Shown here: positions 1,130-21,330 of the stretch, one piece after another | How positions within the stretch are numbered: the stretch's first letter is position 1 | How the letters are laid out: each line of letters starts with the position of its first letter | Assembly: GCF_006345805.1 (NCBI RefSeq) | Contig: NW_021823713.1 | Coordinates: 1-21,534, forward strand | Reading direction: 5' to 3' | Source: Octopus sinensis | Lineage: Eukaryota | Length of the DNA stretch: 21,534 nucleotides | Translations under genes and position numbers: made by a program | The notes under the pieces: model-generated | Told to the model about the DNA's origin: nothing | Seen by the model: only the letters and a program-made list of their open reading frames with translations | Database searches by the model: none

Positions 1130-1408
1130 TGTATATATATATTTTTTTTTCTATCCATCTACCCATCTCTGTATATATATATATATACATAGATACATAT
1201 ATATACACATAATATATATATATATATATATATACATAGATACATATATATATATACACATATAATACAATATATATACATACATATATATATGTGTGTG
1301 TGTGGATGTATATATATATGTGGTCTATGTATATATATGTATATGTAGTAATATATTTATATATATGTATATCTATATATGGATATATATATGTATATAT
1401 ATATATAT
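1130..1408. repeat. Compound (TA)/(CA)/(TG) microsatellite flanking the LINE 3' end
   Basis: Direct inspection. Confidence 0.9.
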
Positions 1409-1492
1409 GATTGATTGATTGATTCTAGTTTCAGCTTATGAGCTGTGGCCATGCTGGGGCACCGCCATTTGGTGTTGCTACTTGGTTTCACT
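1409..1492 (-). other. LINE 3'UTR: stem-loop plus (AATC)4 tail
   Basis: Minus strand reads GGCGGTGCCCCAGCATGGCCACAGCTCATAAGCTGAAACTAG(AATC)4. Hairpin CAGCT-CATA-AGCTG at 1432-1445; GATT x4 at 1409-1424. A stem-loop plus short tandem repeat is the typical CR1/L2 3' end. Confidence 0.8.
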
Positions 1493-4481
1493 TCATGGAG
1501 GCTTTCTAGCAACTGCTATTTGGTGCATGAGAGAGTTCGATGCAGCTGCCCTCATCTGCCCCTCCTGCCGTGAAGTTGGTTCATCTGGGACACCTGACAG
1601 GAAGAGATCCAGCTTCATTTTAAAGACATCTGTATCCACCCCATGCAGGTCTCTCAGGTTCTTCGGGAGGATATTGAAGAGCTGTGGGCCTCGGAAGCCC
1701 AGGCTATCACAGAATCTTGTCCTACATCTTGATGGCAGGTTTGGAGTCCTAGGCACCACGCAGTGGCGCCCAGTTCTGGCATTTGCGTAACTCTCGATGC
1801 CAAAGTTCAGGACACTTCCCTCCAGGATCTTCCAGATGTATATTATGGCATATCTTTCCCGCCTACGCTCCAGGAATATAATTTTAATCTCTTGAGTCTT
1901 TCCCAGTAGCTTACATTCTGCATAGAGGCTATCTTCTTTGTGTAGCTTCGTTGGATCGCCTCAAGTTCTGTGATCAACTTGACACTGGATGGTGACCATA
2001 GCTGAGAGCAATAGTCAAAGTGGCTTAGGACAAGTGTCTTCCAGAGGACCATCATGGTTTCTTGTCTCTTGTTCTAAAGGTTCTAAGAATCCATCCAGCC
2101 AGCCGTCTACATTTCATTGTCAGTTTAGCAACATGTACATGAAAGGTCGCGTCATCACTCATGTGAATACCCAGGTCACGCACTGATTGTGCCTCTGGGA
2201 TTGCAATCCCTCCGGGTCCAGTGTATTCATTGGGTATTGCATTCAGTTTTGCATGCTGATAGTATAAAGCTTGAAACTTTCCAGCATTGAACTGCATGCT
2301 ATTCTTTTCAGCCCACTTGTATATTTCGTCCAGCTCACATTGCAGGTGTTTAGTGTCCTCAGGGTTCTGTATTGCCTGTGAAACTTTTGTATCATCTGCA
2401 TAACTTGTGATCGTGGCTCTCTGCGTGGCTGAGGGCATGTCTGAGAGGGCCATTATGAACAGTAGTGGTCCCAGAACAGTGCCCTGCGGAACACCGCTCA
2501 CTATTTGTGTGTTAATGGAGGTGGCCCCATTGGCTACTACCACCTGACTTCTATCCTTCAGAAAGTCATGAAGCCATTCTCCCAGTTTTCCAACTATGTT
2601 GAGATCACGCAGTTTGTGACATATCATTCCATGATCGACTTTATCAAAGGCCTTTGCAAAGTCGAGATATATCACTTCCACATTTGAGTGGTTGAGCAGC
2701 CGTTTCAGCACCCAGTCATAGTGTTGTAGGAGCTGAGTTAAACAGCTTCTCCCTGGTCGGAAACCATGTTGGGTGTCGGGCAGCAAGTCATTCTCTTCAA
2801 GGAAGGTGATCAGCTTCCTTCTGACTATTCGTTCCATGACCTTGCTGATGTGTGAGGTCAGAGAGATAGGTCTATAGTTCTTGGCTTCCGCTCTGCTACC
2901 TCCTTTATGAATGGGGCATATTTTACCTTCCTTCAGTTTTCCTGGAAGTTTGCCAGCTGCAAGGAAGCTCTGAAAGAGGAACTGCAGTGGTCTTGCTAGG
3001 ACTCTCTTACATGCTTTTAGGAGGATTGCCGGGAATCCATCGGGCCAGTAGCTGAGTCTGTTTTCATTTCATCTATAGCCTTGGTTACATCGTCTTCCTT
3101 TATATCGATGTAATCTATCGTCGCCGCCTCTGATTTTATATCTGCAGTGGTAAAAAAGTCAGTTGGATTGGTGATTTGGAGATGCCCAAGGGGTGGAGTG
3201 AAAACACTCTTGAATTGCTCATTCAGTATTTCACTTACCCTCATTGGTTTTCCTGTAAGTGTGCCATCCTTTTCGAGGAGTGGCCCTATTCTACAGTGCA
3301 CTGTAGCTGTTTCTTTGGCATACCTGTAGAAAGCTCTGGGGTTAGATTTTATGTTTTCTATAGCCCAGGCTTCTTTGTCTGCTCTTTCTTTTTCATGGGA
3401 GAGTTGCAGACATTTTTCGATTTCCAACAGTTTTATTTTTAGGCGGGACTTTTCACTGCTTTCAATCTGTTTGTTTAGGCGATTTGAAAATTTCGTACGC
3501 CGTCTCATTAAAATTTTCCTCTCTCTGGGGATTTTGTTCTTGTGTACAGTGGCCTTTCTCTCTGGGACACATTTGTAGCATATGGCTTGCATTACAGACA
3601 TGAATTGTTGAAGTTTCACGTCGATGTCTGGCGAGGAGAGACATTTAGGCCAGTTTTGTTTGAGGATCTCTTTCTCAATTTGTTTCCAGTTTGCCTTATG
3701 GTAGTTCAAGCTGGAATTTTGAGGGTTTCTTGTAGGCTGCATGTCCGTGCTCTCTTTTGGCCCGTACATGGTCAGCTCTATCATGTTGTGATCCGAGAGT
3801 AGTGTCGGTGTCACTTTCACATTATGGATGAGATCCATGTCATTTGTGAAGCAGAGATCCAGTGTGTTACCTGCCCTGGTTGGTTGGAGTATTACCTGCT
3901 CCATGTACAGGGTGTTGATGAGGTTCAGGAGGGACCTCGCCTGTCCTCGTTCACATCTTGTCATTCCTGGGAGAAAGGCCCTCGGGCCATCTGACATTGG
4001 GCAGATTGAAGTCTCCCATAAGAAGCACACCTATGTGTTGTTCTAATGTGGTTAGAATTTCTTCTATTTTTATAAGGCAGTCTTCAAACTTGCCCACATG
4101 GCTTGGGGCATCTGGAGGGCGATATGTAGCACACACAACTACATCAAGTTGCCTAATATGTACAATTAGTGTGTCACACACCGAGTTTGAGTATGACAAG
4201 AGGACCTGGGGTGTGAGGTCCTCACGGATGTACATAGCAACACCTCCATGACTCCTTTCTTTCCTGTCGGTCCGTAGTACAGCATACTGTGGTATGTGTA
4301 ACTCCGCATCTGCTATGTCCGGTTTCAGGTGCGTTTCTGTAAGTGCTATGCATAAGGCTTGATTGCATGCAACAAAGTCTCTCAGGAACGGGATCTTTGT
4401 CCTGTTACTGAGTGTTTGCAGTCCTCTGATGTTCAGTAGGAGTATCGAGGTGAGGTGTACGTTGTTGCCGGCGGTGTCCAT
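1493..4481 (-). pseudogene. LINE ORF2 (AP endonuclease + reverse transcriptase), about 996 aa when 4 frameshifts are corrected
   Basis: APE motifs NIRGL, ETHL, GGVAMY, YRPP, GDFN, TR..LDL, SDH. RT motifs NYRPISLT, QHGFRPGRSC, YLDFAKAFDKVDH, GVPQGTVLGPLLF, YADD. CR1-type C-terminus DYCSQLWSP, YSLERRRERY, FKMKLDLFL. Frameshifts near 3975, 3043, 2059 and 1873; no in-frame stops in the joined frames. Confidence 0.93.
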
Positions 4482-5341
4482 CCTGTGTCTGTTTGCTGTG
4501 GTGGTCTGGTATATAGTGGGTAGTCCCACCTGCGGGCTTGGGTTTGATGAAGCCAGGTCAGCTGCTGTACAATCTTTTGTGCCATGCACAAAAAAGATTG
4601 TTGCTCAGCAGCTGCTCTTTCGACAACATCATGTTGGCTGTTTGTGGCGCGCACAACATCTGCGTACCTCCGCTTTGGGGCAGGTGGTGCGTGGTCCATC
4701 CCTTTTCTTTGTGTTGATGGTTTGTCCATCTGCCTCGTGTCTCTGTGGCAGGGTCCCCGATGTGCAAAGCGGCAGCCTGCACCTTCCTTTCCGTGCCAGC
4801 AGGAACCTCTCAGGTAGAACATACACACCCGTGTGCGCTGTTTGGTTCCATCCTTTGCGGTTCCACTTCTATCCTGGTTGTTTCACTCTTTGGTCCTGCT
4901 TGAGCTTTTTCTTTTCCTTTAGCTCTTCCAGTCCTTCTTTTAGTTCTTCTTCCTCCCTCTACCTCTTCACCGGGTTCTCCGTCTCCATGGCCCTTGCTGC
5001 CGGTTGGAGAACTTGCACCTGGGTTCACTTCCCGGCAGGTTTCTCATTCAAAACCTCCTCCTGGGCGTCCACCAGGTGGGGGTGACTTCTTTCATCGTCT
5101 CCATTCTTGCCATCTTTGCCCCGCTCGTTCTCAAAGATGGCATCAAGTGCGCCAATGTGCGACCGTACAAGCGCATATGAGCGCACGAATTCTGTCTCTT
5201 TCGCTCCATCTGAGCCGCTGTCCTCTTGTAGCCTCTGCTCTTCAGCGCAGCCGCAATCACCTCGCTAGGGCTATCTCCGCCGGCGCACTCCCATGCTCGT
5301 ACGAATAAATCCAGCTCGTCACGTCTCCATGCTCTGGACAT
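4433..5341 (-). pseudogene. LINE ORF1, about 303 aa when 3 single-base deletions are corrected; Myb/SANT-like N-terminus and CCCH zinc finger
   Basis: Joined frames: MSRAWRRDELDLFVRAW...VIAAALKSRGYKRTAAQMERKRQN.../HIGALDAIFE...PAG/EVNPGASS...SAHG/VCMFYLRGSCWHGKEGAGCRFAH...RYSY*. Frameshifts near 5160, 5032 and 4829. Confidence 0.7.
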
Positions 5342-5400
5342 GCTGGATAATCCGTCTATCCGTTTATCTATCTAATTATGTTCGAGAGAAGACAGGAAGA

Positions 5401-6105
5401 TATTAAGGCTAATTAAGATAGAGTACTTGAAAAAGAAATATTAACAATTTAAAGTTTGTGTAAAAACGTTATTTGGGTAAAAACGTTATTTAATCTTAAG
5501 GCTAATTAGGAGATAGAGTATCTGAAAATATATTAGCAATATTAATATTATATTAGAGTGTGGGTAAAAAAAACGTTATTTAATCTTAAGGCTAATTTGG
5601 AGATAGAGTATCTGAAAATATATTAGCAATATTATATTATATTAGAGTGTGGGTAATTTAAACGTTATTTAATTAATCTTAAGGCTAATTAGAAGACAGA
5701 GTATCTGAAAAATTATATATACAATATTAAGCAATATTAACCGTTATTTAATTAATCTTAAGGCTAATTAGACGTTATTAATATTAAACGTTATTTAATT
5801 TAATCTTAAGGCTAATTAGAAGATAGAGTATCTGAAAATATATTAGCAATATTAATATTATATTAGAGTGTGGATAAAAACGTTATTTAATCTTAAGGCT
5901 AATCAGGAGATAGAGTATCTGAAAATATATTAGCAATGTTAATATTATATTAGAGTGTGGGTAATATTAAAAGTTATTTAATTTAATCTTAAGGCTAATT
6001 AGAAGATAGAGTATCTGAAGAATTATTAACAATATTAAAACAATATTAAACGTTATTTAATTTAATCTTAAGGCTAATTAGAAGATAGAGTATCTGGAAA
6101 ATTAT
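5401..6105. repeat. Tandem array of 9 units (about 80-95 bp, one truncated) with a roughly 310-bp higher-order period, directly upstream of LINE ORF1
   Basis: Core TAAGGCTAAT...GATAGAGTA starts at 5404, 5497, 5587, 5680, 5759, 5807, 5894, 5990 and 6069. Confidence 0.92.
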
Positions 6106-6556
6106 TATATCGAGAACAGTTATTGAAAATGTAAACAAACAAAATGACGATCGCAACTTTAACTAAGATGTGGGCCTAAGTGAAAGATAAAATAGAATAA
6201 TAAATAAAATATGAAATAGATGAAATTGATATTTAATCCAACAATGTGGTCTGGATTATTTTTTTTTTTTTGTTACGGGATTTTTTTCAGGAGAGAGCTT
6301 CTTTTTTCTTTCTTGCAGGAGATAACTTGATCAGTTATTTTTGCACCATGTGCGTTTCGGCGAAAATGAAAATTACTGTGTATATGTATATATTTATATA
6401 TATATATTTAAAAATATTTTTAACCAAAGTGTTGTAGTGATCTCTATGACTTAGAGTTTTACGTTTGGCAACTACAGTGGGTTATTTCGCCGTTCTATGC
6501 AAACTTTTTCACAGAGCAAAGGCAATCACGTCTTTCTCTGCTGAAAACGGAACCGG

Positions 6557-7447: not shown

Positions 7448-8299
7448 TCTTTCTCAGCTTCGAATTATATTTGTTGGAGGGATATAAATATCTTCTTTCT
7501 ACACTAGCTCACCTTCTTCTTCAAGGGAAACTTAAATGGAAGCTTAAATGATGCTGTACATGAGGATGTTAACTATGATTATTATAATGACATTAGTGAT
7601 GATAAATGATAATAATAATAATTTCAAAGGTGGAGAAAATGTAAACACATGAACTGCAATGCCTCTATACGAAAACTGAAAACCTGTGAGCGAAACTTTA
7701 TTTAATCACATATGCTTCCATCCATATCTATACAAATGCTCTATGTATATGCTCATTTCTGTTTCTTCTCGGTCTCTTGCGTATACATCAGTAATGAATA
7801 TGAATACGAAAGAAACATTAACACATCTCCATGCACGGTGTTCTGTCAAATGGTAAACGCTGTAAAGACGGACTTATAACAAGTCCAAAAAAGAAACGAT
7901 GGACGGATAATTAAGAATGCGATGAAAGAGTTGATTTATGATTTACACACATTACTATGCAACACTCCTCTAAAGCATACAGGAATAAACTAATTCAGTA
8001 AATACCCAACAAAATGAACAAACCCCACAATACGAGACATAGAAGTTCGATACCCAATATAACCTACACTGTACAAACTACACACAATACAAAAGCTAAT
8101 ATAACAGAAGACTCAAACCAAACCCCATAGCAAAACATATTGATGCAATACAGTTTTCCCCAAAGATAAAGTTGAGGCACACACCAACACCAACACAAAA
8201 TTGCTGCAAGCGATGCAATGGAAAGTTACTTGAAACTATCAAATGCCGAATAATAATAGTAGTGATGACGATGGTGACGAACGTTACCTTACCTCCATA

Positions 8300-10182
8300 T
8301 ATAAGCGACAAGAGTTTGCGTATAAACTCAGATTATAACAGCGAACATGTGGTTAGACATTTAATGGAAGGTCTTTTGCTCGGCAGTGGTTCGATATAGA
8401 TGGAGACTGACCACAGCTGTTATCCTAAGACAATATCAGCAGATATAGAGTAAAGAGGAGGAAGTTGACCTGTGAAGAAAACAGGATAGTGGTGCAATGA
8501 TACTGAGAAAGTGAACCTAAAAGAAGAGGTTATGGAAAACGGATGCAGAGAAGGGCATGTTTAAAGTGACTGAGCAGAGTTACTACTAGATCACGCTAAT
8601 GCTATTAGGAGAATAAAGTGGATGACTGAATTGGAATTGGGAGAGATCACAAGAGAACTTGAAAAGAAAGACCAGATTGTCTGTAGAATAAAACGGCAAC
8701 ATAAGAGATTCAGTTCAAACTGAAGAACCTAAAGGTAAAAAATAATACTAACACCATCAATAAGAAAGGGACAACTGGCACCAATAATTTAAGTGATTTA
8801 AGTGAGGAAGATCAGAAGATTTTAGATGAGTTGCAGGAAGTAATGAGTACAGAAGTAAGATAAAGATTGCCAGCTTTAAAAGGCACCAACAGAAGGAAGT
8901 TGCTAGAAATGACTAGGAAAGTAGATTCTATTATCAGTAGGATAGATACTGAAAATATAGGTGACACTAACTTATTGATCTATGCAGGAGGAGAAGCAGT
9001 GACTAGAAGATTAGATATTTCACAAGGAAAGGTTTGGAAAGAGCAAATGTGGAAAAAGGGACTATAAATAAAATGAAGACTTTAATAGAAGATCTGAATA
9101 GAAACAAGGCTGGAAACTGAACAAGTTAGGAAACACAAGAAGATCTAAATCTTCACTTGAGAAAAGATACTTAATCAAAGAGAAAGAATTTGGAACAGCC
9201 GTTGAAGAGTTGAAACAGCATATCAGCAGTTACAAGTAAGCTTTCCAGATATCAGAAAATAATAGCTCTGTATCAACAGAAGAGATTATTTGAGACTGAG
9301 ATTTTATAAGCAAATAAATAGTGGAGATAAAAGTACTGAAGATGAGAAACCTACTGCAAAAGAAGCTAAAAAGTTCTAATGTAATATTTGGGATAAGCCA
9401 GTCACCCATAATGGTGATGCGATATGGTTAATGAAAGTGAGGGAAGAGGTAGTGAGTGAGAAGCTGCCTGATGTAAGACTAACTAATACATTAATAAGTA
9501 AAGTGTTAGGAAAAATGCCAAAATGGCAGGCCCCAGGACCAGATTTAGATCGAGGGTACTAGTTAAAGAAATTTTGTAGTCTACATGGGTGGCACAAGGA
9601 ACATCTTCAGGATTGCCTTAATGAAGGAATAATACCAGATTGTATGAGTCCCTACAATATTCCCTATGAAAGACAAAATTAAGGGTAATATAACTAGCAA
9701 TTATAGACTAATCACTTGCTTACCATTAGTGTGGAAGCTGTTAACAGGGATACTTTCAGAAAGCATTTATGAGCACCTGGACAGAATGAGCAAGTATAAA
9801 GATCTTGAAATAGAAATTAGCAAAATGTGGAACCTGAAGACTAAAACAATACTTGGAATGGTAGCAAAAGGGGCTGATTGCTACCTAGCTCAGATACTAA
9901 GAAACGCCAAAATGGCTGAAATTCAAAAGATAGTGCTCATAGGAACTGCTCATATCCTACGCAATATACTTTCTATGTAATCTCAAGTTTTAAAACAAAC
10001 ATAATTTTCTTATGGTTTCTTAAACATTCTTTAGAATAACATTATGTACAAAACCAAATATATAATGGCACCCTAAGCATAACACCAACATGAACTTCTA
10101 TCATGTTGTCTCTTGAGGTCCTTGGGTGAGACTTGGAGCCAATTTGTACAAATACAGAGCAAAAGTCAAACATAAAATAATA

Positions 10183-10856: not shown

Positions 10857-10964
10857 TTAGAAATATGGACAGGTGATCAGATGCATCCAACTATGTAGCA
10901 CGTTTGAAAAAAATTTAATGAATAGGATAGGATACAATGTAATAGATAAGTAAATGGATGGATG

Positions 10965-11037
<73 letters not shown>

Positions 11038-11159
11038 GTAGACAGATAGGTAGACAGATAGACAGGTAGGTAGATAGATAGACAGGTAGGTAGGTATGTT
11101 GGTAGATAAATAGATAGATAGGTAGATGATAGACAGGTAGATAAATAGATAGATAGATG

Positions 11160-11221
<62 letters not shown>

Positions 11222-11935: not shown

Positions 11936-12532
11936 GAAGGCGGCGATCTGGCAGAATCGTTAGCACACCGGGTGAAATGCGTAACCGTATTTCGTCTGCC
12001 TCTACGTTCTGAGTTCAAATTCCGCCGAGGTCGACTTTGCCTTTCATCCTTTCGGGGGTCGATAAATTAAGTACCAGTTACGCCCTGGGGTCGATGTAAT
12101 CGACTTAATACCTATGTCTGTCCTTGTTTGTTCCCTCTGTGTTTAGCCCCTTGTGGGTAATAAAGAAATAGGTATTTTGTCTGCCGTTACGTTCTGAGTT
12201 CAAATTCCGCCGAGTTCGTCTTTGCCTTTCATCCATTCGGGGTCGATAAATTAAGTACCAGTTACGCCCTGGGATCGATGTAATCGACTTAATCCGTTCG
12301 TCTGTCCTTGTTTGTCCCCTCTGTGTTAAGCCCATTGTGGGTAGTAAAGAAATAGGTATTTCGTCTGCTGTTACGTTCAAATTCCGCCGAGGTCGACTTT
12401 GCCTTTCATCCTTTCGGGGGTCGATAAATTAACTACCAGTTACGCCCTGGGGTCGATGTAATCGACTTAATCCGTTTGTCTGTCCTTGTTTGTCATCTCT
12501 GTGTTTAGCCCCTTGTGGGTAGTAAAGAAATA
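11936..12532 (+). mobile_element. tRNA-derived SINE (Nin-like core), head-to-tail trimer flanked by a 15-bp TSD
   Basis: A-box TGGCAGAATCG 11949-11959; B-box GAGTTCAAATTCC 12011-12023; core GCCTTTCATCCTTTCGGGGTCGATAAATTAAGTACCAG. Units restart at GTATTT at 11987, 12172 and 12356. TSD GGTATTTTTGTTACC (11921-11935) / GGTATTTTTGCTACC (12533-12547). Confidence 0.88.
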
Positions 12533-12707
12533 GGTATTTTTGCTACCATTTTATCGTTTATGTTGTCATTCATAATACGGTCTCTGCTGTTGTTGTTCTT
12601 GTTGTAGTTGTTTGCATGTGGCTGCTTAGCCATTCACAGGTAGGTAGGTTTTGACAGAGCAAACTTTTACCACTATCATTATCATCGACATTAGCAGTAT
12701 TAAACCA

Positions 12708-17635: not shown

Positions 17636-18262
17636 GCAAATATATATATGTGATATTACGTACAGACACAGATACTTATATATACACACAGACACAGACA
17701 CACACGCACACACACACAAACGCGCACATGCAACATACATAAATAGATATACATGAAATAAATGTACATAGACAAACATGAAATATATAGCAAATATATG
17801 TGATATCACGTAGAGACACAGATACTTATGTATGCACACATACACACACACGCACACGCACACACACACACACACATAAACACACATACATAATACATAT
17901 ACAAGAAATATATGTATATAGACAAACATGAAATATATAACAAATATATGTGATATCACGTAGAGACACAGATACTTATATATGCACACACACACACACA
18001 CACACGCACACACACAGACACACATAAACACACATACATAAATACATATACAAGAAATCTATGTATATAGACAAACATGAAATATATAACAAATATATGT
18101 GATATCACGTAGAGACACAGATACTTATATATGCACACACACACATACACACACACATACACACACACACACACAAACGCGCACACACACAAACGCGCAC
18201 CCACAACACACATAAATACATATACATGAAATATTTGTATATAGACAAACATGAAATATATA
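17636..18262. repeat. Minisatellite of 4 units (150, 150, 149 bp and a longer incomplete unit) built around (CA)n tracts
   Basis: Anchor TGTGATATYACGTASAGACACAGATACTTAT starts at 17649, 17799, 17949 and 18098. Confidence 0.9.
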
Positions 18263-20812: not shown

Positions 20813-21046
20813 CGGCAGAAATGTAGATTCTTAGACAATTAGATACAAGAGAAGAGGGAGATTAAAATGAAATGATTAATAGATGTAGGTGGGATCATGG
20901 GTAACAAAGCGAGATCGATACTTATTACTGTATTTATGAAATAGCCTCAGGCATAAAGTTCCGACTAAACAGGGTTTTTTACTCCACCATATACAGCACC
21001 ACTGTTACATTGCAGACCATTATAAATCAAATTGAAGGTTATCAGT

Positions 21047-21053
21047 CTATCTC

Positions 21054-21151
<98 letters not shown>

Positions 21152-21156
21152 TTAAC

Positions 21157-21232
<76 letters not shown>

Positions 21233-21330
21233 TTGTCTGTCTATTTGTCTGTCTGTTTAGATATCTCTTCTCTCTCTCTCTTCTCTCTGTCTCTGTCTCT
21301 CTCTCTCTCTCTTTCTCTCTCTCTCGCTCT
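21047..21330. repeat. (TATC)n / (TGTC)n / (TC)n microsatellite block
   Basis: Direct inspection. Confidence 0.92.

What the first reader, a model, noticed from the sequence alone, without database searches (positions are those of the whole stretch)
4735..5341. LINE ORF1 with a Myb/SANT(trihelix)-like domain plus a CCCH zinc finger
Seen: the N-terminus W-RRDE-LDLFVRAW...VIAAALKSRGYKRTAAQMERKRQN, followed after one frameshift by ALDAIF, matches the pattern of Myb/SANT-like trihelix domains (W..EE..LI..W...IA..L...GY.RT..QC..K..NL...LDAIL). A C-x7-C-x8-C-x3-H finger (CMFYLRGSCWHGKEGAGCRFAH) lies downstream. Known: ORF1s of CR1/L2/Jockey-group LINEs usually carry RRM+CCHC, PHD or esterase modules, whereas Myb-like domains are typical of R2 proteins and Harbinger accessory proteins. 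Inference: this may be an undescribed ORF1 architecture combining a DNA-binding and an RNA-binding module. Together with the upstream tandem array it suggests a LINE that binds and regulates its own promoter, or that selects targets. I cannot confirm novelty without a search.
Basis: partly seen in the sequence, partly recalled or inferred. Interest (0 to 1): 0.75.

Follow-up and report, generated by a model that had tools for sequence, protein, structure and literature searches.

The report
Octopus LINE ORF1 with Myb-like domain
A dead copy of an octopus jumping gene (a LINE) encodes a first protein that joins a small Myb/SANT-like three-helix domain to one CCCH zinc finger, and I found this domain combination intact in other octopod copies but not described in the literature I could search.

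Summary
On the minus strand, ORF1 of a roughly 4.7-kb APE/RT LINE starts at 5341. It has the quoted N-terminus, a 1-nt frameshift near 5189, ALDAIF at 5150-5133, and a C-x7-C-x8-C-x3-H finger at 4825-4760.

This copy is a pseudogene: at least 2-3 frame breaks in ORF1 and about 4 in ORF2. ORF1 runs on to 4436, beyond the stated range.

The architecture is real and conserved. The same ORF1 (N-domain, disordered linker, one CCCH, C-terminal helix) sits directly upstream of APE/RT in five other loci: Octopus vulgaris (intact, 318 aa), O. sinensis, Argonauta hians (intact) and two unnamed assemblies.

The N-domain is best read as a Myb_DNA-bind_4/trihelix-type domain:
- Pfam hits are consistent but below threshold (best 22.9-23.1 bits, cut-off 27).
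- hhalign against validated trihelix domains gives P=1.4e-5; 0 of 200 shuffles come near.
- The AlphaFold model has three helices (pLDDT 89.5), and the top Foldseek hits are Myb domains.
- The domain is basic (pI 9-10).

More distant marine LINEs carry PHD + 3-4 CCCH + the same helix, so octopods appear to have a Myb-like module where relatives have PHD.

Binding to its own promoter is unsupported, because the 5' arrays are unrelated between subfamilies.

Verdict: a new variant of a known kind, of moderate interest.

The parts
5400..6110 (-). AT-rich tandem array (units of about 87-90 bp, higher-order 310 bp) ending about 60 bp upstream of the ORF1 ATG. Probably the LINE's monomeric 5' UTR.
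   Evidence: TRF; self-blast shows the array only here. Unrelated tandem units sit in the same position in L001, L004 and L008.
5189..5341 (-). ORF1 start and the first two-thirds of the Myb/SANT-like N-domain (M1-N51): helices 1 and 2 and the start of helix 3.
   Evidence: Translation; Pfam Myb_DNA-bind_4; AlphaFold2 helices 7-19, 25-35, 42-74.
5115..5189 (-). Rest of N-domain helix 3 (FVRSYALVRSHIGALDAIFENERGK) in the neighbouring frame, after a 1-nt shift near 5189.
   Evidence: Intact relatives read ...RKK.EF.RSY.LIRPH...LD.I in one frame.
4826..5114 (-). Charged low-complexity linker of ORF1. The frame is ambiguous in this copy, and there are further frame breaks or stops.
   Evidence: The equivalent region in intact P0145 is predicted disordered (pLDDT<55).
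4760..4825 (-). Single CCCH zinc finger CMFYLRGSCWHGKEGAGCRFAH (C-x7-C-x8-C-x3-H).
   Evidence: Pfam zf-CCCH 17.2 bits and Torus 24.1 bits, both below cut-off. The ligands are conserved in relatives. The near-identical finger of P0144 passes zf-CCCH at 26.4 bits against a cut-off of 20.5.
4529..4672 (-). Conserved 'YADVV' motif and the C-terminal amphipathic helix (ERAAAEQQSFLCMAQKIVQQLTWLHQTQ).
   Evidence: Alignments A3 and A5. AlphaFold2 gives a helix at 253-287 of P0145, pLDDT 79-87. The same 'SSFLEILQ' helix occurs in the outgroup ORF1s.
4433..4528 (-). P/Q-rich tail of ORF1 and its stop codon (4435-4433). It overlaps the ORF2 start.
3954..4481 (-). ORF2 start (ATG at 4481) and the APE endonuclease domain.
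   Evidence: Pfam Exo_endo_phos 28.5 bits against a cut-off of 24.5.
1493..4030 (-). Rest of ORF2 in pieces: linker 4030-3017, RT 2999-2055, C-terminal region to the stop at 1495-1493, with about 4 frame switches overall.
   Evidence: Pfam RVT_1 109.7 bits; translation; 88% identity to the 1033-aa protein P0001.
1408..1466 (-). 3' UTR end: two conserved hairpins (GGCGGTGCCCCAGCATGGCC and CAGC..GCTG) followed by a short (AATC)n tail.
   Evidence: The same motif occurs in L001-L004, with a different tail repeat in each subfamily.

Best explanation
The region is ORF1 of a decayed copy of an octopod LINE. The LINE looks like the CR1/L2 group by structure: APE+RT in ORF2, with a 3' stem-loop plus a short microsatellite tail.

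In intact relatives ORF1p is a modular protein of about 290-320 aa with five parts:

1. A basic N-terminal three-helix domain of about 75 aa, homologous to Myb/SANT-like trihelix domains (Myb_DNA-bind_4 type).
2. A charged disordered linker of about 110 aa.
3. One CCCH zinc finger.
4. An amphipathic helix of about 35 aa.
5. A P/Q-rich tail.

Shown here:
- The architecture.
- Its conservation.
- Its linkage to ORF2.
- The fold-level and profile-level Myb similarity.

Inferred mechanism:
- The CCCH finger and the basic linker bind the LINE RNA, and the C-terminal helix multimerises the protein, so that it coats its own transcript as other ORF1 proteins do.
- The Myb-like domain occupies the N-terminal slot that a PHD finger holds in the nearest more distant relatives.
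- In that slot it would give the particle a DNA or chromatin contact during integration. Whether that contact is sequence-specific is unknown.

The window copy itself is non-functional.
For: LINE identity and ORF order:
- APE and RT pass the Pfam cut-offs downstream on the same strand.
- ORF2 is 88% identical to an intact 1033-aa protein.
- The same ORF1 followed by APE/RT occurs in L001 Argonauta hians (intact 291-aa ORF1), L004 O. sinensis, L008 O. vulgaris (intact 318-aa ORF1 and a 921-aa open ORF2), L009 and L010.

The family is real: 24 hits in the exhaustive search.

N-domain:
- Myb_DNA-bind_4 is the top Pfam hit in the frame-joined window sequence (22.9 bits, E 1.2e-4) and the only one for the consensus (23.1 bits).
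- It also hits the Argonauta protein (19.2 bits), P0134 (16.5) and P0128 (15.6), always at profile positions about 2-70.
- hhalign against 10 wheat trihelix domains, each passing PF13837 at 44-89 bits, gives probability 80%, P 1.4e-5 and 58 aligned columns. It pairs W5, E9, the G-Y/F38..R40 motif, Q44, K48 and Y56 with the trihelix W/E/GY.R/Q/K/Y.
- Controls: the reversed alignment scores 10.4, and 200 column shuffles have mean 9.8 and maximum 14.8, against 31.4 for the real alignment.
- AlphaFold2 pLDDT is 89.5, with helices at 7-19, 25-35 and 42-74.
- Top Foldseek PDB hits are Myb domains: PHR1 (probability 0.95), LUX, CDC5L, GT-1, RTBP1, ZZZ3 and Zeste.
- All 12 members are basic, pI 9.0-10.2. 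K34 and R40 are invariant, and there is a basic run R47-K48-K/R49 in helix 3.

CCCH finger:
- The four ligands are kept in most relatives.
- The same C-x7-C-x8-C-x3-H spacing is found in the first finger of the outgroup ORF1s.
- The finger of P0144 passes the zf-CCCH cut-off.

PHD in the same slot: outgroup LINEs with 40-44% ORF2 identity have a C4HC3 PHD, 3-4 CCCH fingers and the same C-terminal helix, and no N-domain.
Against: - No member reaches Pfam's gathering score for Myb_DNA-bind_4 (27 bits).
- The window's finger is below the zf-CCCH cut-off (17.2 against 20.5).
- No Foldseek match has E<0.4. Small three-helix bundles match many folds, and homeodomains are also among the hits.
- The profile search of PDB sequences found no Myb protein. 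Its best hits were ribosomal protein S8, at non-significant E values.
- The hhalign probability is 80%, not above 95%.
- The alignments are shallow (12-20 sequences, nearly all from octopods).
- Nothing here tests DNA, RNA or zinc binding, or oligomerisation.
- The RT clade was not determined by phylogeny.
- 'PHD replaced by Myb' rests on three outgroup contigs of unknown organism. The direction of change is not established.
Confidence: 0.62

Rival explanations
1. The Myb-like domain binds the element's own 5' tandem monomers, so ORF1p regulates its own promoter or recognises its own DNA or RNA 5' end.
For: - Tandem units lie directly upstream of the ORF1 ATG in the window, in L001 (112 bp x2), in L004 (about 152 bp x2-3) and in L008 (35 bp x2.6). 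An array next to the gene for a putative DNA-binding domain is therefore a recurring feature.
- The N-domain is basic.
Against: - The arrays share no detectable sequence between subfamilies: AT-rich in the window, CT-rich in L004 and L008.
- Across those subfamilies the N-domain keeps its helix-3 residues K34, R40, Q44, K48, R54 and Y56 in all or nearly all members.
- Monomeric 5' UTR arrays are also reported in CR1-group elements that have no ORF1 at all (PMC13343379), so they do not need such a protein.
- No binding data exist.
Confidence: 0.1
2. The Myb-like domain selects integration targets, as Myb domains do in R2 and in R1/TRAS-type LINEs, making this a site- or repeat-specific LINE.
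For: - Myb domains direct target recognition in other LINE clades (background knowledge, not tested here).
- In the window and in both 3' ends in L004, the element's tail runs into TA/CATA-rich microsatellite.
Against: - The two Argonauta 3' ends and L002 are followed by unrelated sequence.
- Octopus DNA is full of TA microsatellites, so the association can be chance.
- The short tail repeats are element-encoded and vary in copy number.
- The family proteins annotated in O. vulgaris come from six differently sized records, i.e. several chromosomes, so copies are dispersed.
- Too few junctions were seen to test this.
Confidence: 0.1
3. The N-terminal domain is a generic helical bundle, convergent with Myb or very remotely related. 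It acts in protein-protein contacts or RNA binding, and the Myb label is a by-product of a common helical pattern.
For: - All Pfam scores are below the curated cut-off.
- Foldseek E-values are not significant, and the hits include homeodomains and Fur/ArgR winged helices.
- The PDB sequence profile search found nothing.
- SANT-type relatives of Myb are protein-binding, not DNA-binding (background knowledge).
Against: - The same single Pfam family is hit by five divergent members at the same profile positions.
- The hhalign score is about 12 SD above the column shuffles, and the reversed control fails.
- The signature residues line up (W, E, GY.R, Q, K, Y).
- The domain is basic rather than acidic as in typical SANT domains.
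Confidence: 0.15
4. There is no real gene here. The reading frame is a chance product of translating decayed repeat DNA, or it is a host gene fragment lying next to a 5'-truncated LINE.
For: - The window copy needs several frame corrections.
- The word-indexed protein search with the joined ORF1 found nothing.
Against: - Intact single-frame ORF1s of 289-371 aa with the same order of parts exist in other genomes.
- All five other loci examined have the ORF1 abutting or overlapping the APE domain.
- E-values go down to 1e-28 in the exhaustive search.
Confidence: 0.02

Closest known systems
PHD-type ORF1 of CR1/L2-lineage LINEs (Type III of Khazina & Weichenrieder; CR1 subgroups 2, 4, 6 and L2 subgroup 4 in Metcalfe & Casane 2014, PMC4120745)
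   Same: - A small ORF1 directly upstream of an APE+RT ORF2, with a compact N-terminal reader or binding module.
- The nearest outgroup elements found here (L005, L007) have a C4HC3 PHD followed by CCCH fingers and the same C-terminal 'SFLE.LQ' helix.
- Their first finger has the identical C-x7-C-x8-C-x3-H spacing.
   Different: - In the octopod lineage the N-terminal module is a Myb/SANT-like three-helix domain, not a PHD.
- Only one CCCH finger is kept.
- The published survey lists PHD, RRM, CCHC, Tnp22, esterase, lz/zf and coiled coil, but no Myb and no CCCH.
Myb_DNA-bind_4 (PF13837) / trihelix (GT-1, GT-2) domains and the related MADF and Harbinger-type Myb-like DNA-binding domains
   Same: - Three helices with a long basic third helix.
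- The aligned signature is W..E..L..W ... GY.R...Q...K.......Y.
- hhalign P=1.4e-5 to validated trihelix domains.
- GT-1 (2jmw) and Zeste (5cqq) are among the Foldseek hits.
   Different: - Scores are below Pfam's cut-off.
- The domain is shorter than the model. It matches profile positions about 2-72 of 89, and the segment with the last conserved aromatic pair of trihelix domains is absent.
- It is encoded by a LINE ORF1, not by a host transcription factor or a DNA-transposon accessory gene.
Myb domains of target-specific LINEs (R2 N-terminal zinc finger + Myb; Myb-like region of R1/TRAS ORF2). From background knowledge, not tested here.
   Same: A LINE-encoded Myb-type module that could contact DNA.
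   Different: - In those elements the Myb is part of the RT-bearing protein and confers a known target specificity.
- Here it is in ORF1p, in a CR1/L2-like element, with dispersed copies and no shown specificity.
CCCH zinc fingers of RNA-binding proteins (Pfam zf-CCCH PF00642, PARP12/ZAP-like, Torus)
   Same: Cys3His ligand order, aromatic and basic residues between the ligands, and weak hits to several CCCH models.
   Different: - The second spacer is 8 residues, against 4-6 in the canonical motif.
- There is one finger, not a tandem pair.
- The window's score is below the cut-off.
Monomeric 5' UTR arrays of LINEs: mouse L1 monomers (background knowledge) and the repeating 5' subunits of vertebrate CR1-group elements (PMC13343379)
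   Same: Tandem units of tens to hundreds of bp directly upstream of the first ORF, with sequences specific to each subfamily.
   Different: Promoter activity is untested here. The paper describes such arrays in ORF1-less elements.

Membership tests
LINE (non-LTR retrotransposon) ORF1 | Lies upstream of, on the same strand as, and adjacent to or overlapping an ORF2 with APE endonuclease and reverse transcriptase. | tested here: met
   ORF1 runs 5341-4436, and the ORF2 ATG is at 4481. Exo_endo_phos scores 28.5 bits (cut-off 24.5) and RVT_1 scores 109.7 bits (cut-off 29.6).
LINE (non-LTR retrotransposon) ORF1 | The same ORF1-ORF2 linkage is found in independent copies or relatives. | tested here: met
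   L001, L004, L008, L009 and L010.
CR1 group of LINEs (CR1, L2, Rex1, Daphne, Crack, Kiri; Repbase scheme as quoted in PMC13343379) | Placement of the RT domain in that group by phylogeny (RTclass1/Repbase). | not testable with these tools
   No reference RT set, Repbase or Dfam was available. The assignment rests on structure only.
CR1 group of LINEs | A 3' end with a conserved stem-loop and a short tandem-repeat tail instead of poly(A). The link between this feature and CR1/L2 elements is background knowledge. | tested here: met
   There is a conserved GGCGGTGCCCCAGCATGGCC..CAGC-loop-GCTG motif. It is followed by (AATC)n here, (ATACAAG)n in Argonauta and (TTTAAGGA)2 in O. sinensis. Two hairpins are predicted, with little covariation.
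Pfam Myb_DNA-bind_4 (PF13837) | Score at or above the curated gathering threshold (27 bits). | tested here: not met
   Window as read, 15.8 bits. Frame-joined window sequence, 22.9 bits. Family consensus, 23.1 bits. Relatives, 15.6-19.2 bits.
Pfam Myb_DNA-bind_4 (PF13837) | Profile-profile similarity to bona fide members. | tested here: met
   hhalign against 10 wheat trihelix domains that pass PF13837 gives probability 79.9%, P 1.4e-5 and score 31.4. The maximum of 200 shuffles is 14.8, and the reversed alignment scores 10.4.
Myb/SANT fold | A three-helix bundle with a helix-turn-helix arrangement. | tested here: met
   AlphaFold2 pLDDT 89.5 and pTM 0.72, with helices at 7-19, 25-35 and 42-74. 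The full-length model reproduces this.
Myb/SANT fold | Significant structural match to solved Myb/SANT domains. | tested here: inconclusive
   The top Foldseek hits are Myb domains (6j5b probability 0.95, TM 0.54/0.67; also 5lxu, 2jmw, 2roh, 2yum, 5cqq). The best E-value is 0.43, and homeodomains also match.
Myb-type DNA-binding domain | Binds double-stranded DNA. | not testable with these tools
   Only indirect evidence: pI 9.0-10.2 and conserved basic residues in helix 3.
Pfam zf-CCCH (PF00642) | Score at or above the gathering threshold (20.5 bits). | tested here: not met
   Window 17.2 bits and P0145 18.6 bits. The relative P0144, with a near-identical finger, passes at 26.4 bits.
CCCH zinc finger | Conserved Cys-Cys-Cys-His ligands with fixed spacing across relatives. 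| tested here: met
   C-x7-C-x8-C-x3-H is found in the window, P0121, P0122, P0123, P0124, P0130, P0133, P0145, L002 and the first finger of L005, L007 and P0144. The ligands are lost only in visibly decayed copies.
CCCH zinc finger | Binds zinc and single-stranded RNA. | not testable with these tools
   Needs biochemistry.

The most novel reading that the evidence does not exclude
This would be the first LINE lineage in which ORF1p, rather than the RT-bearing protein, carries a sequence-reading Myb-type DNA-binding domain, acquired in place of a chromatin-reading PHD finger. The ORF1 protein would then steer the particle to particular DNA, either insertion sites or the element's own 5' monomers. 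It would also define a new ORF1 type (Myb-like + CCCH + helix) outside the five published types.
Probability: 0.2. Interest if true: 0.75.

Novelty: new variant of a known kind. Interest (0 to 1): 0.5.

Why it matters
ORF1 proteins are the least understood part of LINEs. Outside L1, only a handful of domain types are on record: RRM, CCHC, Tnp22, PHD and esterase.

- A conserved ORF1 that pairs a Myb/SANT-like domain with a CCCH finger adds a new module set.
- Together with the PHD + CCCH relatives, it gives a natural pair for asking what the N-terminal module of such ORF1 proteins does, for example chromatin or DNA tethering.
- Octopus genomes are rich in transposable elements. Intact copies of this element exist in O. 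vulgaris and Argonauta, so it may be recently active.
- The proteins are currently annotated only as 'hypothetical' or '---NA---' host genes. Recognising them as LINE ORF1s would correct the annotation.

Tried and rejected
- **Word-indexed search with the frame-joined ORF1.** No hits. The exhaustive search was needed.
- **Word-indexed profile search with the N-domain alignment.** Only three family members were found, and no outside relatives.
- **Profile search of PDB sequences.** Only non-significant ribosomal S8, TAF5 and Gfh1 matches. Rejected as chance.
- **P0139.** It matches the out-of-frame stretch 'NSCAHMRLYG' and is a repetitive peptide. Rejected as an artefact of reading past the frameshift.
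- **Other copies in the window.** None.
- **Exact look-up of the window's 97-aa ORF.** Not on record, so the source species was not identified. The closest DNA is L003 at 89% identity.
- **Defining the 5' end by comparing L008 with L004.** The 5' UTRs do not align, and the output was swamped by microsatellites.
- **Target preference for TA microsatellites.** Suggestive in 3 junctions and absent in 3 others. Left as untested.
- **Circular shifts as an hhalign control.** They keep most of the local alignment, so they are not a valid null. Column shuffles and reversal were used instead.
- **Rfam and tRNA scans of the window.** Nothing found.
- **Structure prediction with a row translated from L002.** Repeated without that row.
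- **Two trihelix papers' supplements.** They held no sequences. A third did.
Full report
**What is at the coordinates**

The feature is on the minus strand. Translating 5400 down to 1400 in three frames shows a LINE. An ORF starts at ATG 5341. It is followed by an APE endonuclease (ATG at 4481; Pfam Exo_endo_phos 28.5 bits, cut-off 24.5) and a reverse transcriptase (RVT_1, 109.7 bits).

- MSRAW...KRQN at 5341-5189.
- FVRSYALVRSHIGALDAIFENERGK at 5189-5115 in the neighbouring frame, with ALDAIF at 5150-5133.
- CMFYLRGSCWHGKEGAGCRFAH at 4825-4760.

The first and last parts of ORF1 are in the same frame: 5341 to 4436 is 302 codons. The middle is not. After the 1-nt shift near 5189, the second frame runs into three stops. 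A third frame is open from 5025 to 4813, and the original frame resumes by 4882. So at least two frame breaks, and probably three, are needed. ORF2 also changes frame about four times. This copy is a pseudogene.

ORF1 extends beyond the finding's lower limit (4735). It ends at 4436, with its stop codon at 4435-4433, and overlaps the start of ORF2.

**Is it a real gene family?**

A word-indexed search with the frame-joined ORF1 found nothing. The exhaustive phmmer search of 1.84 billion cluster representatives found 24 proteins at E<=1e-3:
- Several cover the whole ORF1: P0122 (371 aa), P0123 (291 aa) and P0124 (289 aa). P0121 (265 aa) covers only its C-terminal part.
- Others match the N-domain only: P0126, P0128, P0129, P0131 and P0134, at E 1e-13 to 2e-7.

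The sources name them 'hypothetical' or '---NA---' proteins of Octopus vulgaris, LOC118766810 of O. sinensis, and a protein of Argonauta hians. A cluster mate, P0145, is an intact 318-aa ORF1 from O. vulgaris.

**Linkage to ORF2**

Searching with ORF2 gave close relatives at 88%, 64%, 62% and 55% identity, the last from Argonauta hians. I fetched the DNA for several loci.

- **L001, Argonauta.** An intact single-frame ORF1 (MSRNWLKDEMRLLVEAW...CRYYIRGKCRHTQNGTQCRFAH...YADAVKRANNEQINFLKVAQEMVTHLTWMH) abuts the APE domain.
- **L004, O. sinensis.** The same order of parts, decayed.
- **L008, O. vulgaris.** An intact ORF1 at 8001-8957, followed by a 921-aa open ORF2.
- **L009 and L010.** ORF1 runs straight into an APE domain 63-67% identical to the window's.
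- **L002 and L003.** Short contigs that hold only the C-terminal part of ORF1 before ORF2.

The refutation test 'the 5050-5341 segment is not linked to ORF2 in other copies' therefore fails. The linkage is conserved.

**The N-terminal domain**

*Pfam.* Read as it stands, the window's N-terminus scores only 15.8 bits against Myb_DNA-bind_4 (E 0.019). With the frame joined as the intact relatives dictate, it scores 22.9 bits (E 1.2e-4). The family consensus scores 23.1 bits, Argonauta 19.2, P0134 16.5 and P0128 15.6. All hit profile positions about 2-70 of 89. In most of them it is the top or the only hit, and the Argonauta protein's CCCH hit ranks just above it. None reaches the curated 27 bits, so formal Pfam membership is not met.

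*Profile-profile comparison.* To test homology independently, I took ten wheat trihelix domains from a published table (PMC6460849, Table S3). I confirmed that each passes PF13837 at 43.8-88.6 bits, then aligned them and compared profiles with hhalign.
- Result: probability 79.9%, P 1.4e-5, score 31.4, 58 aligned columns.
- W5, E9, the GY.R motif (38-40), Q44, K48 and Y56 pair with the trihelix W, E, GY.R, Q(C), K and Y.
- Controls: the reversed alignment scores 10.4, and 200 column shuffles have mean 9.8, SD 1.8 and maximum 14.8. The ORF1 C-terminal alignment scores 9.8.

*Structure.* AlphaFold2 on the 12-sequence alignment gives a confident model (pLDDT 89.5, pTM 0.72) with helices at 7-19, 25-35 and 42-74. 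The full-length model of P0145 reproduces them. Foldseek against the PDB puts Myb domains on top:
- PHR1 6j5b (probability 0.95, TM 0.54/0.67).
- LUX 5lxu, CDC5L chains, GT-1 2jmw, RTBP1 2roh, ZZZ3 2yum and Zeste 5cqq.
- The best E-value is 0.43, and homeodomains also appear.

A profile search of PDB sequences found nothing relevant.

*Charge and conservation.* All twelve N-domains are basic (pI 9.0-10.2, net +3 to +7). L33, K34, R40 and L58 are invariant. Q44, K48, Y56 and L66 are nearly so.

Taken together, this is a Myb/SANT-like domain of the trihelix/Myb_DNA-bind_4 type. It is divergent and somewhat shortened.

**The finger and the rest of ORF1**

The finger scores below Pfam cut-offs in the window: zf-CCCH 17.2 bits against 20.5, and Torus 24.1 against 29. 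The four ligands and the C-x7-C-x8-C-x3-H spacing are kept in P0121, P0122, P0123, P0124, P0130, P0133, P0145 and L002. The near-identical finger of P0144 (CKFYLRGSCKHGKKGSKCSFKH) passes zf-CCCH at 26.4 bits.

Downstream lie a conserved 'YADxV' motif and a helix...AAAEQQSFLCMAQKIVQQLTWLH. AlphaFold2 predicts this helix as residues 253-287 of P0145, with pLDDT 79-87. Residues 76-190 are disordered, and the finger has pLDDT around 75.

**Relatives outside octopods**

ORF2 proteins with 40-44% identity come from marine metagenomes. They sit behind ORF1s of a related but different design:
- L005 has a complete C4HC3 PHD signature at residues 98-150. L007 has the C-terminal half of one, at the contig edge.
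- Both are followed by three to four CCCH fingers. The first has exactly the C-x7-C-x8-C-x3-H spacing.
- They end in a C-terminal 'SSFLEILQ...' helix that aligns with the octopod helix.

The N-domain profile finds nothing in these proteins. So the finger-plus-helix core is shared by a wider group of marine LINEs. The octopod lineage has a Myb-like domain where the relatives have PHD. This fits the documented modular shuffling of ORF1 domains (PMC4120745), but the direction and timing of the change are not established.

**What kind of LINE it is**

ORF2 shows APE and RT, and I saw no other domain in the pieces scanned. The 3' end carries a conserved motif, GGCGGTGCCCCAGCATGGCC followed by CAGC-loop-GCTGAAAC. 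It is predicted as two hairpins.

After the hairpins comes a short tandem-repeat tail that differs by subfamily:
- (AATC)n in the window.
- (ATACAAG)2-4 in two Argonauta copies.
- (TTTAAGGA)2 in O. sinensis.

From background knowledge this is the CR1/L2 style of 3' end, not a poly(A) tail. I could not run an RT phylogeny or consult Repbase or Dfam, so the clade is not named.

The AT-rich array at about 5400-6110 has units of about 87-90 bp and a 310-bp higher order. It ends about 60 bp from the ATG. Tandem units sit in the same place in three other loci:
- Argonauta: 112 bp x2, ending 20 bp from the ATG.
- O. sinensis: about 152 bp x2-3.
- O. vulgaris: 35 bp x2.6.

An array is therefore probably part of the 5' UTR. 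This resembles the repeating 5' subunits reported for vertebrate CR1-group elements (PMC13343379).

But the arrays are unrelated in sequence, AT-rich in one case and CT-rich in others. The N-domain's helix-3 residues are conserved across the same subfamilies. That argues against a simple 'binds its own monomers' model, and nothing tests it directly.

Target choice is equally open. Three 3' junctions run into TA-rich microsatellite and three do not. Such microsatellites are everywhere in this DNA.

**Novelty**

The survey of ORF1 domains in the Jockey/CR1/L2 superfamily lists PHD, RRM, CCHC, Tnp22, esterase, leucine zipper/zinc finger and coiled coil. It lists no Myb and no CCCH (PMC4120745). 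None of these mention such an ORF1:
- A 2026 survey of vertebrate CR1-group elements (PMC13343379).
- The octopus brain LINE paper, which describes an RTE element with no ORF1 (PMC9115989).
- A bivalve transposon survey (PMC10294476).
- A gastropod LINE study (PMC11203168).

Four full-text searches combining Myb, Myb_DNA-bind_4 or CCCH with ORF1 and LINE terms returned nothing relevant. Absence from the library I could search is not proof of absence. A consensus may exist in Repbase without a domain description.

**Verdict**

- The Myb-like call is well supported as remote homology and fold. It is not supported as Pfam membership.
- The functional ideas are speculation.
- This is a new variant of a known kind of thing, a LINE ORF1 with a fresh domain set, seen here in a dead copy while intact copies exist in other octopod genomes.
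- Interest is moderate, at 0.5.

Noticed in passing
window 11987-12539: Three tandem copies of a 184-bp unit (90% matches). The unit contains GAGTTCAAATTCCGCCGAGGTCGACTTTGCC, which looks like a tRNA-derived SINE head. However, ARAGORN and Rfam found no tRNA or RNA family in the window.
   Followed up: partly
window 1408-1466 (-); L001 12396 and a second copy on the other strand; L004 14859 and 16583; L002 3454; L003 3171: A conserved 3' UTR motif is predicted as two adjacent hairpins, followed by a subfamily-specific short tandem-repeat tail whose copy number varies between insertions. L004 (near 16583), L008 (5783-5904) and L001 (other strand) also hold further matches to this 3' end. The first two are short fragments, 5'-truncated copies or a SINE sharing the LINE tail. 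The L001 match lies near the locus end, so its extent was not determined.
   Followed up: partly
L005 184-1554, L006 1-1038, L007 2-1222 (marine metagenome contigs): LINEs with 40-44% ORF2 identity have an ORF1 built of PHD (C4HC3), then 3-4 CCCH fingers, then a C-terminal 'SSFLEILQ' helix. CCCH fingers are not listed among ORF1 domains in the published survey. The host organisms are unknown.
   Followed up: partly
L008 8001-12050 (Octopus vulgaris OX597829.1): A near-intact full-length relative: ORF1 is intact (318 aa) and ORF2 is open for 921 codons, with one frame change near the C-terminus. The family may have been active recently in O. vulgaris. Its ORF1 is annotated as a host protein named '---NA---'.
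   Followed up: partly
window 17644-18178: A tandem repeat of a 150-bp unit (3.6 copies, 91% matches) with an embedded (CA)n run. There are also many long microsatellites across the window, including (ATAG)70 at 10942-11221, (TCTA)50 at 21046-21244 and (TA)n blocks.
   Followed up: no
window 5144-5189 (frame of the ORF1 start): The out-of-frame read-through 'NSCAHMRLYGRT' matched a repetitive protein (P0139, E 3.6e-4) in the exhaustive search. This is a reminder that hits to the part of the 97-aa ORF after the frameshift are artefacts.
   Followed up: yes
L001 6500-7428: A 39-bp satellite (24.5 copies, 92% matches) lies about 1 kb upstream of the Argonauta element. It shows no evident relation to the element.
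   Followed up: no
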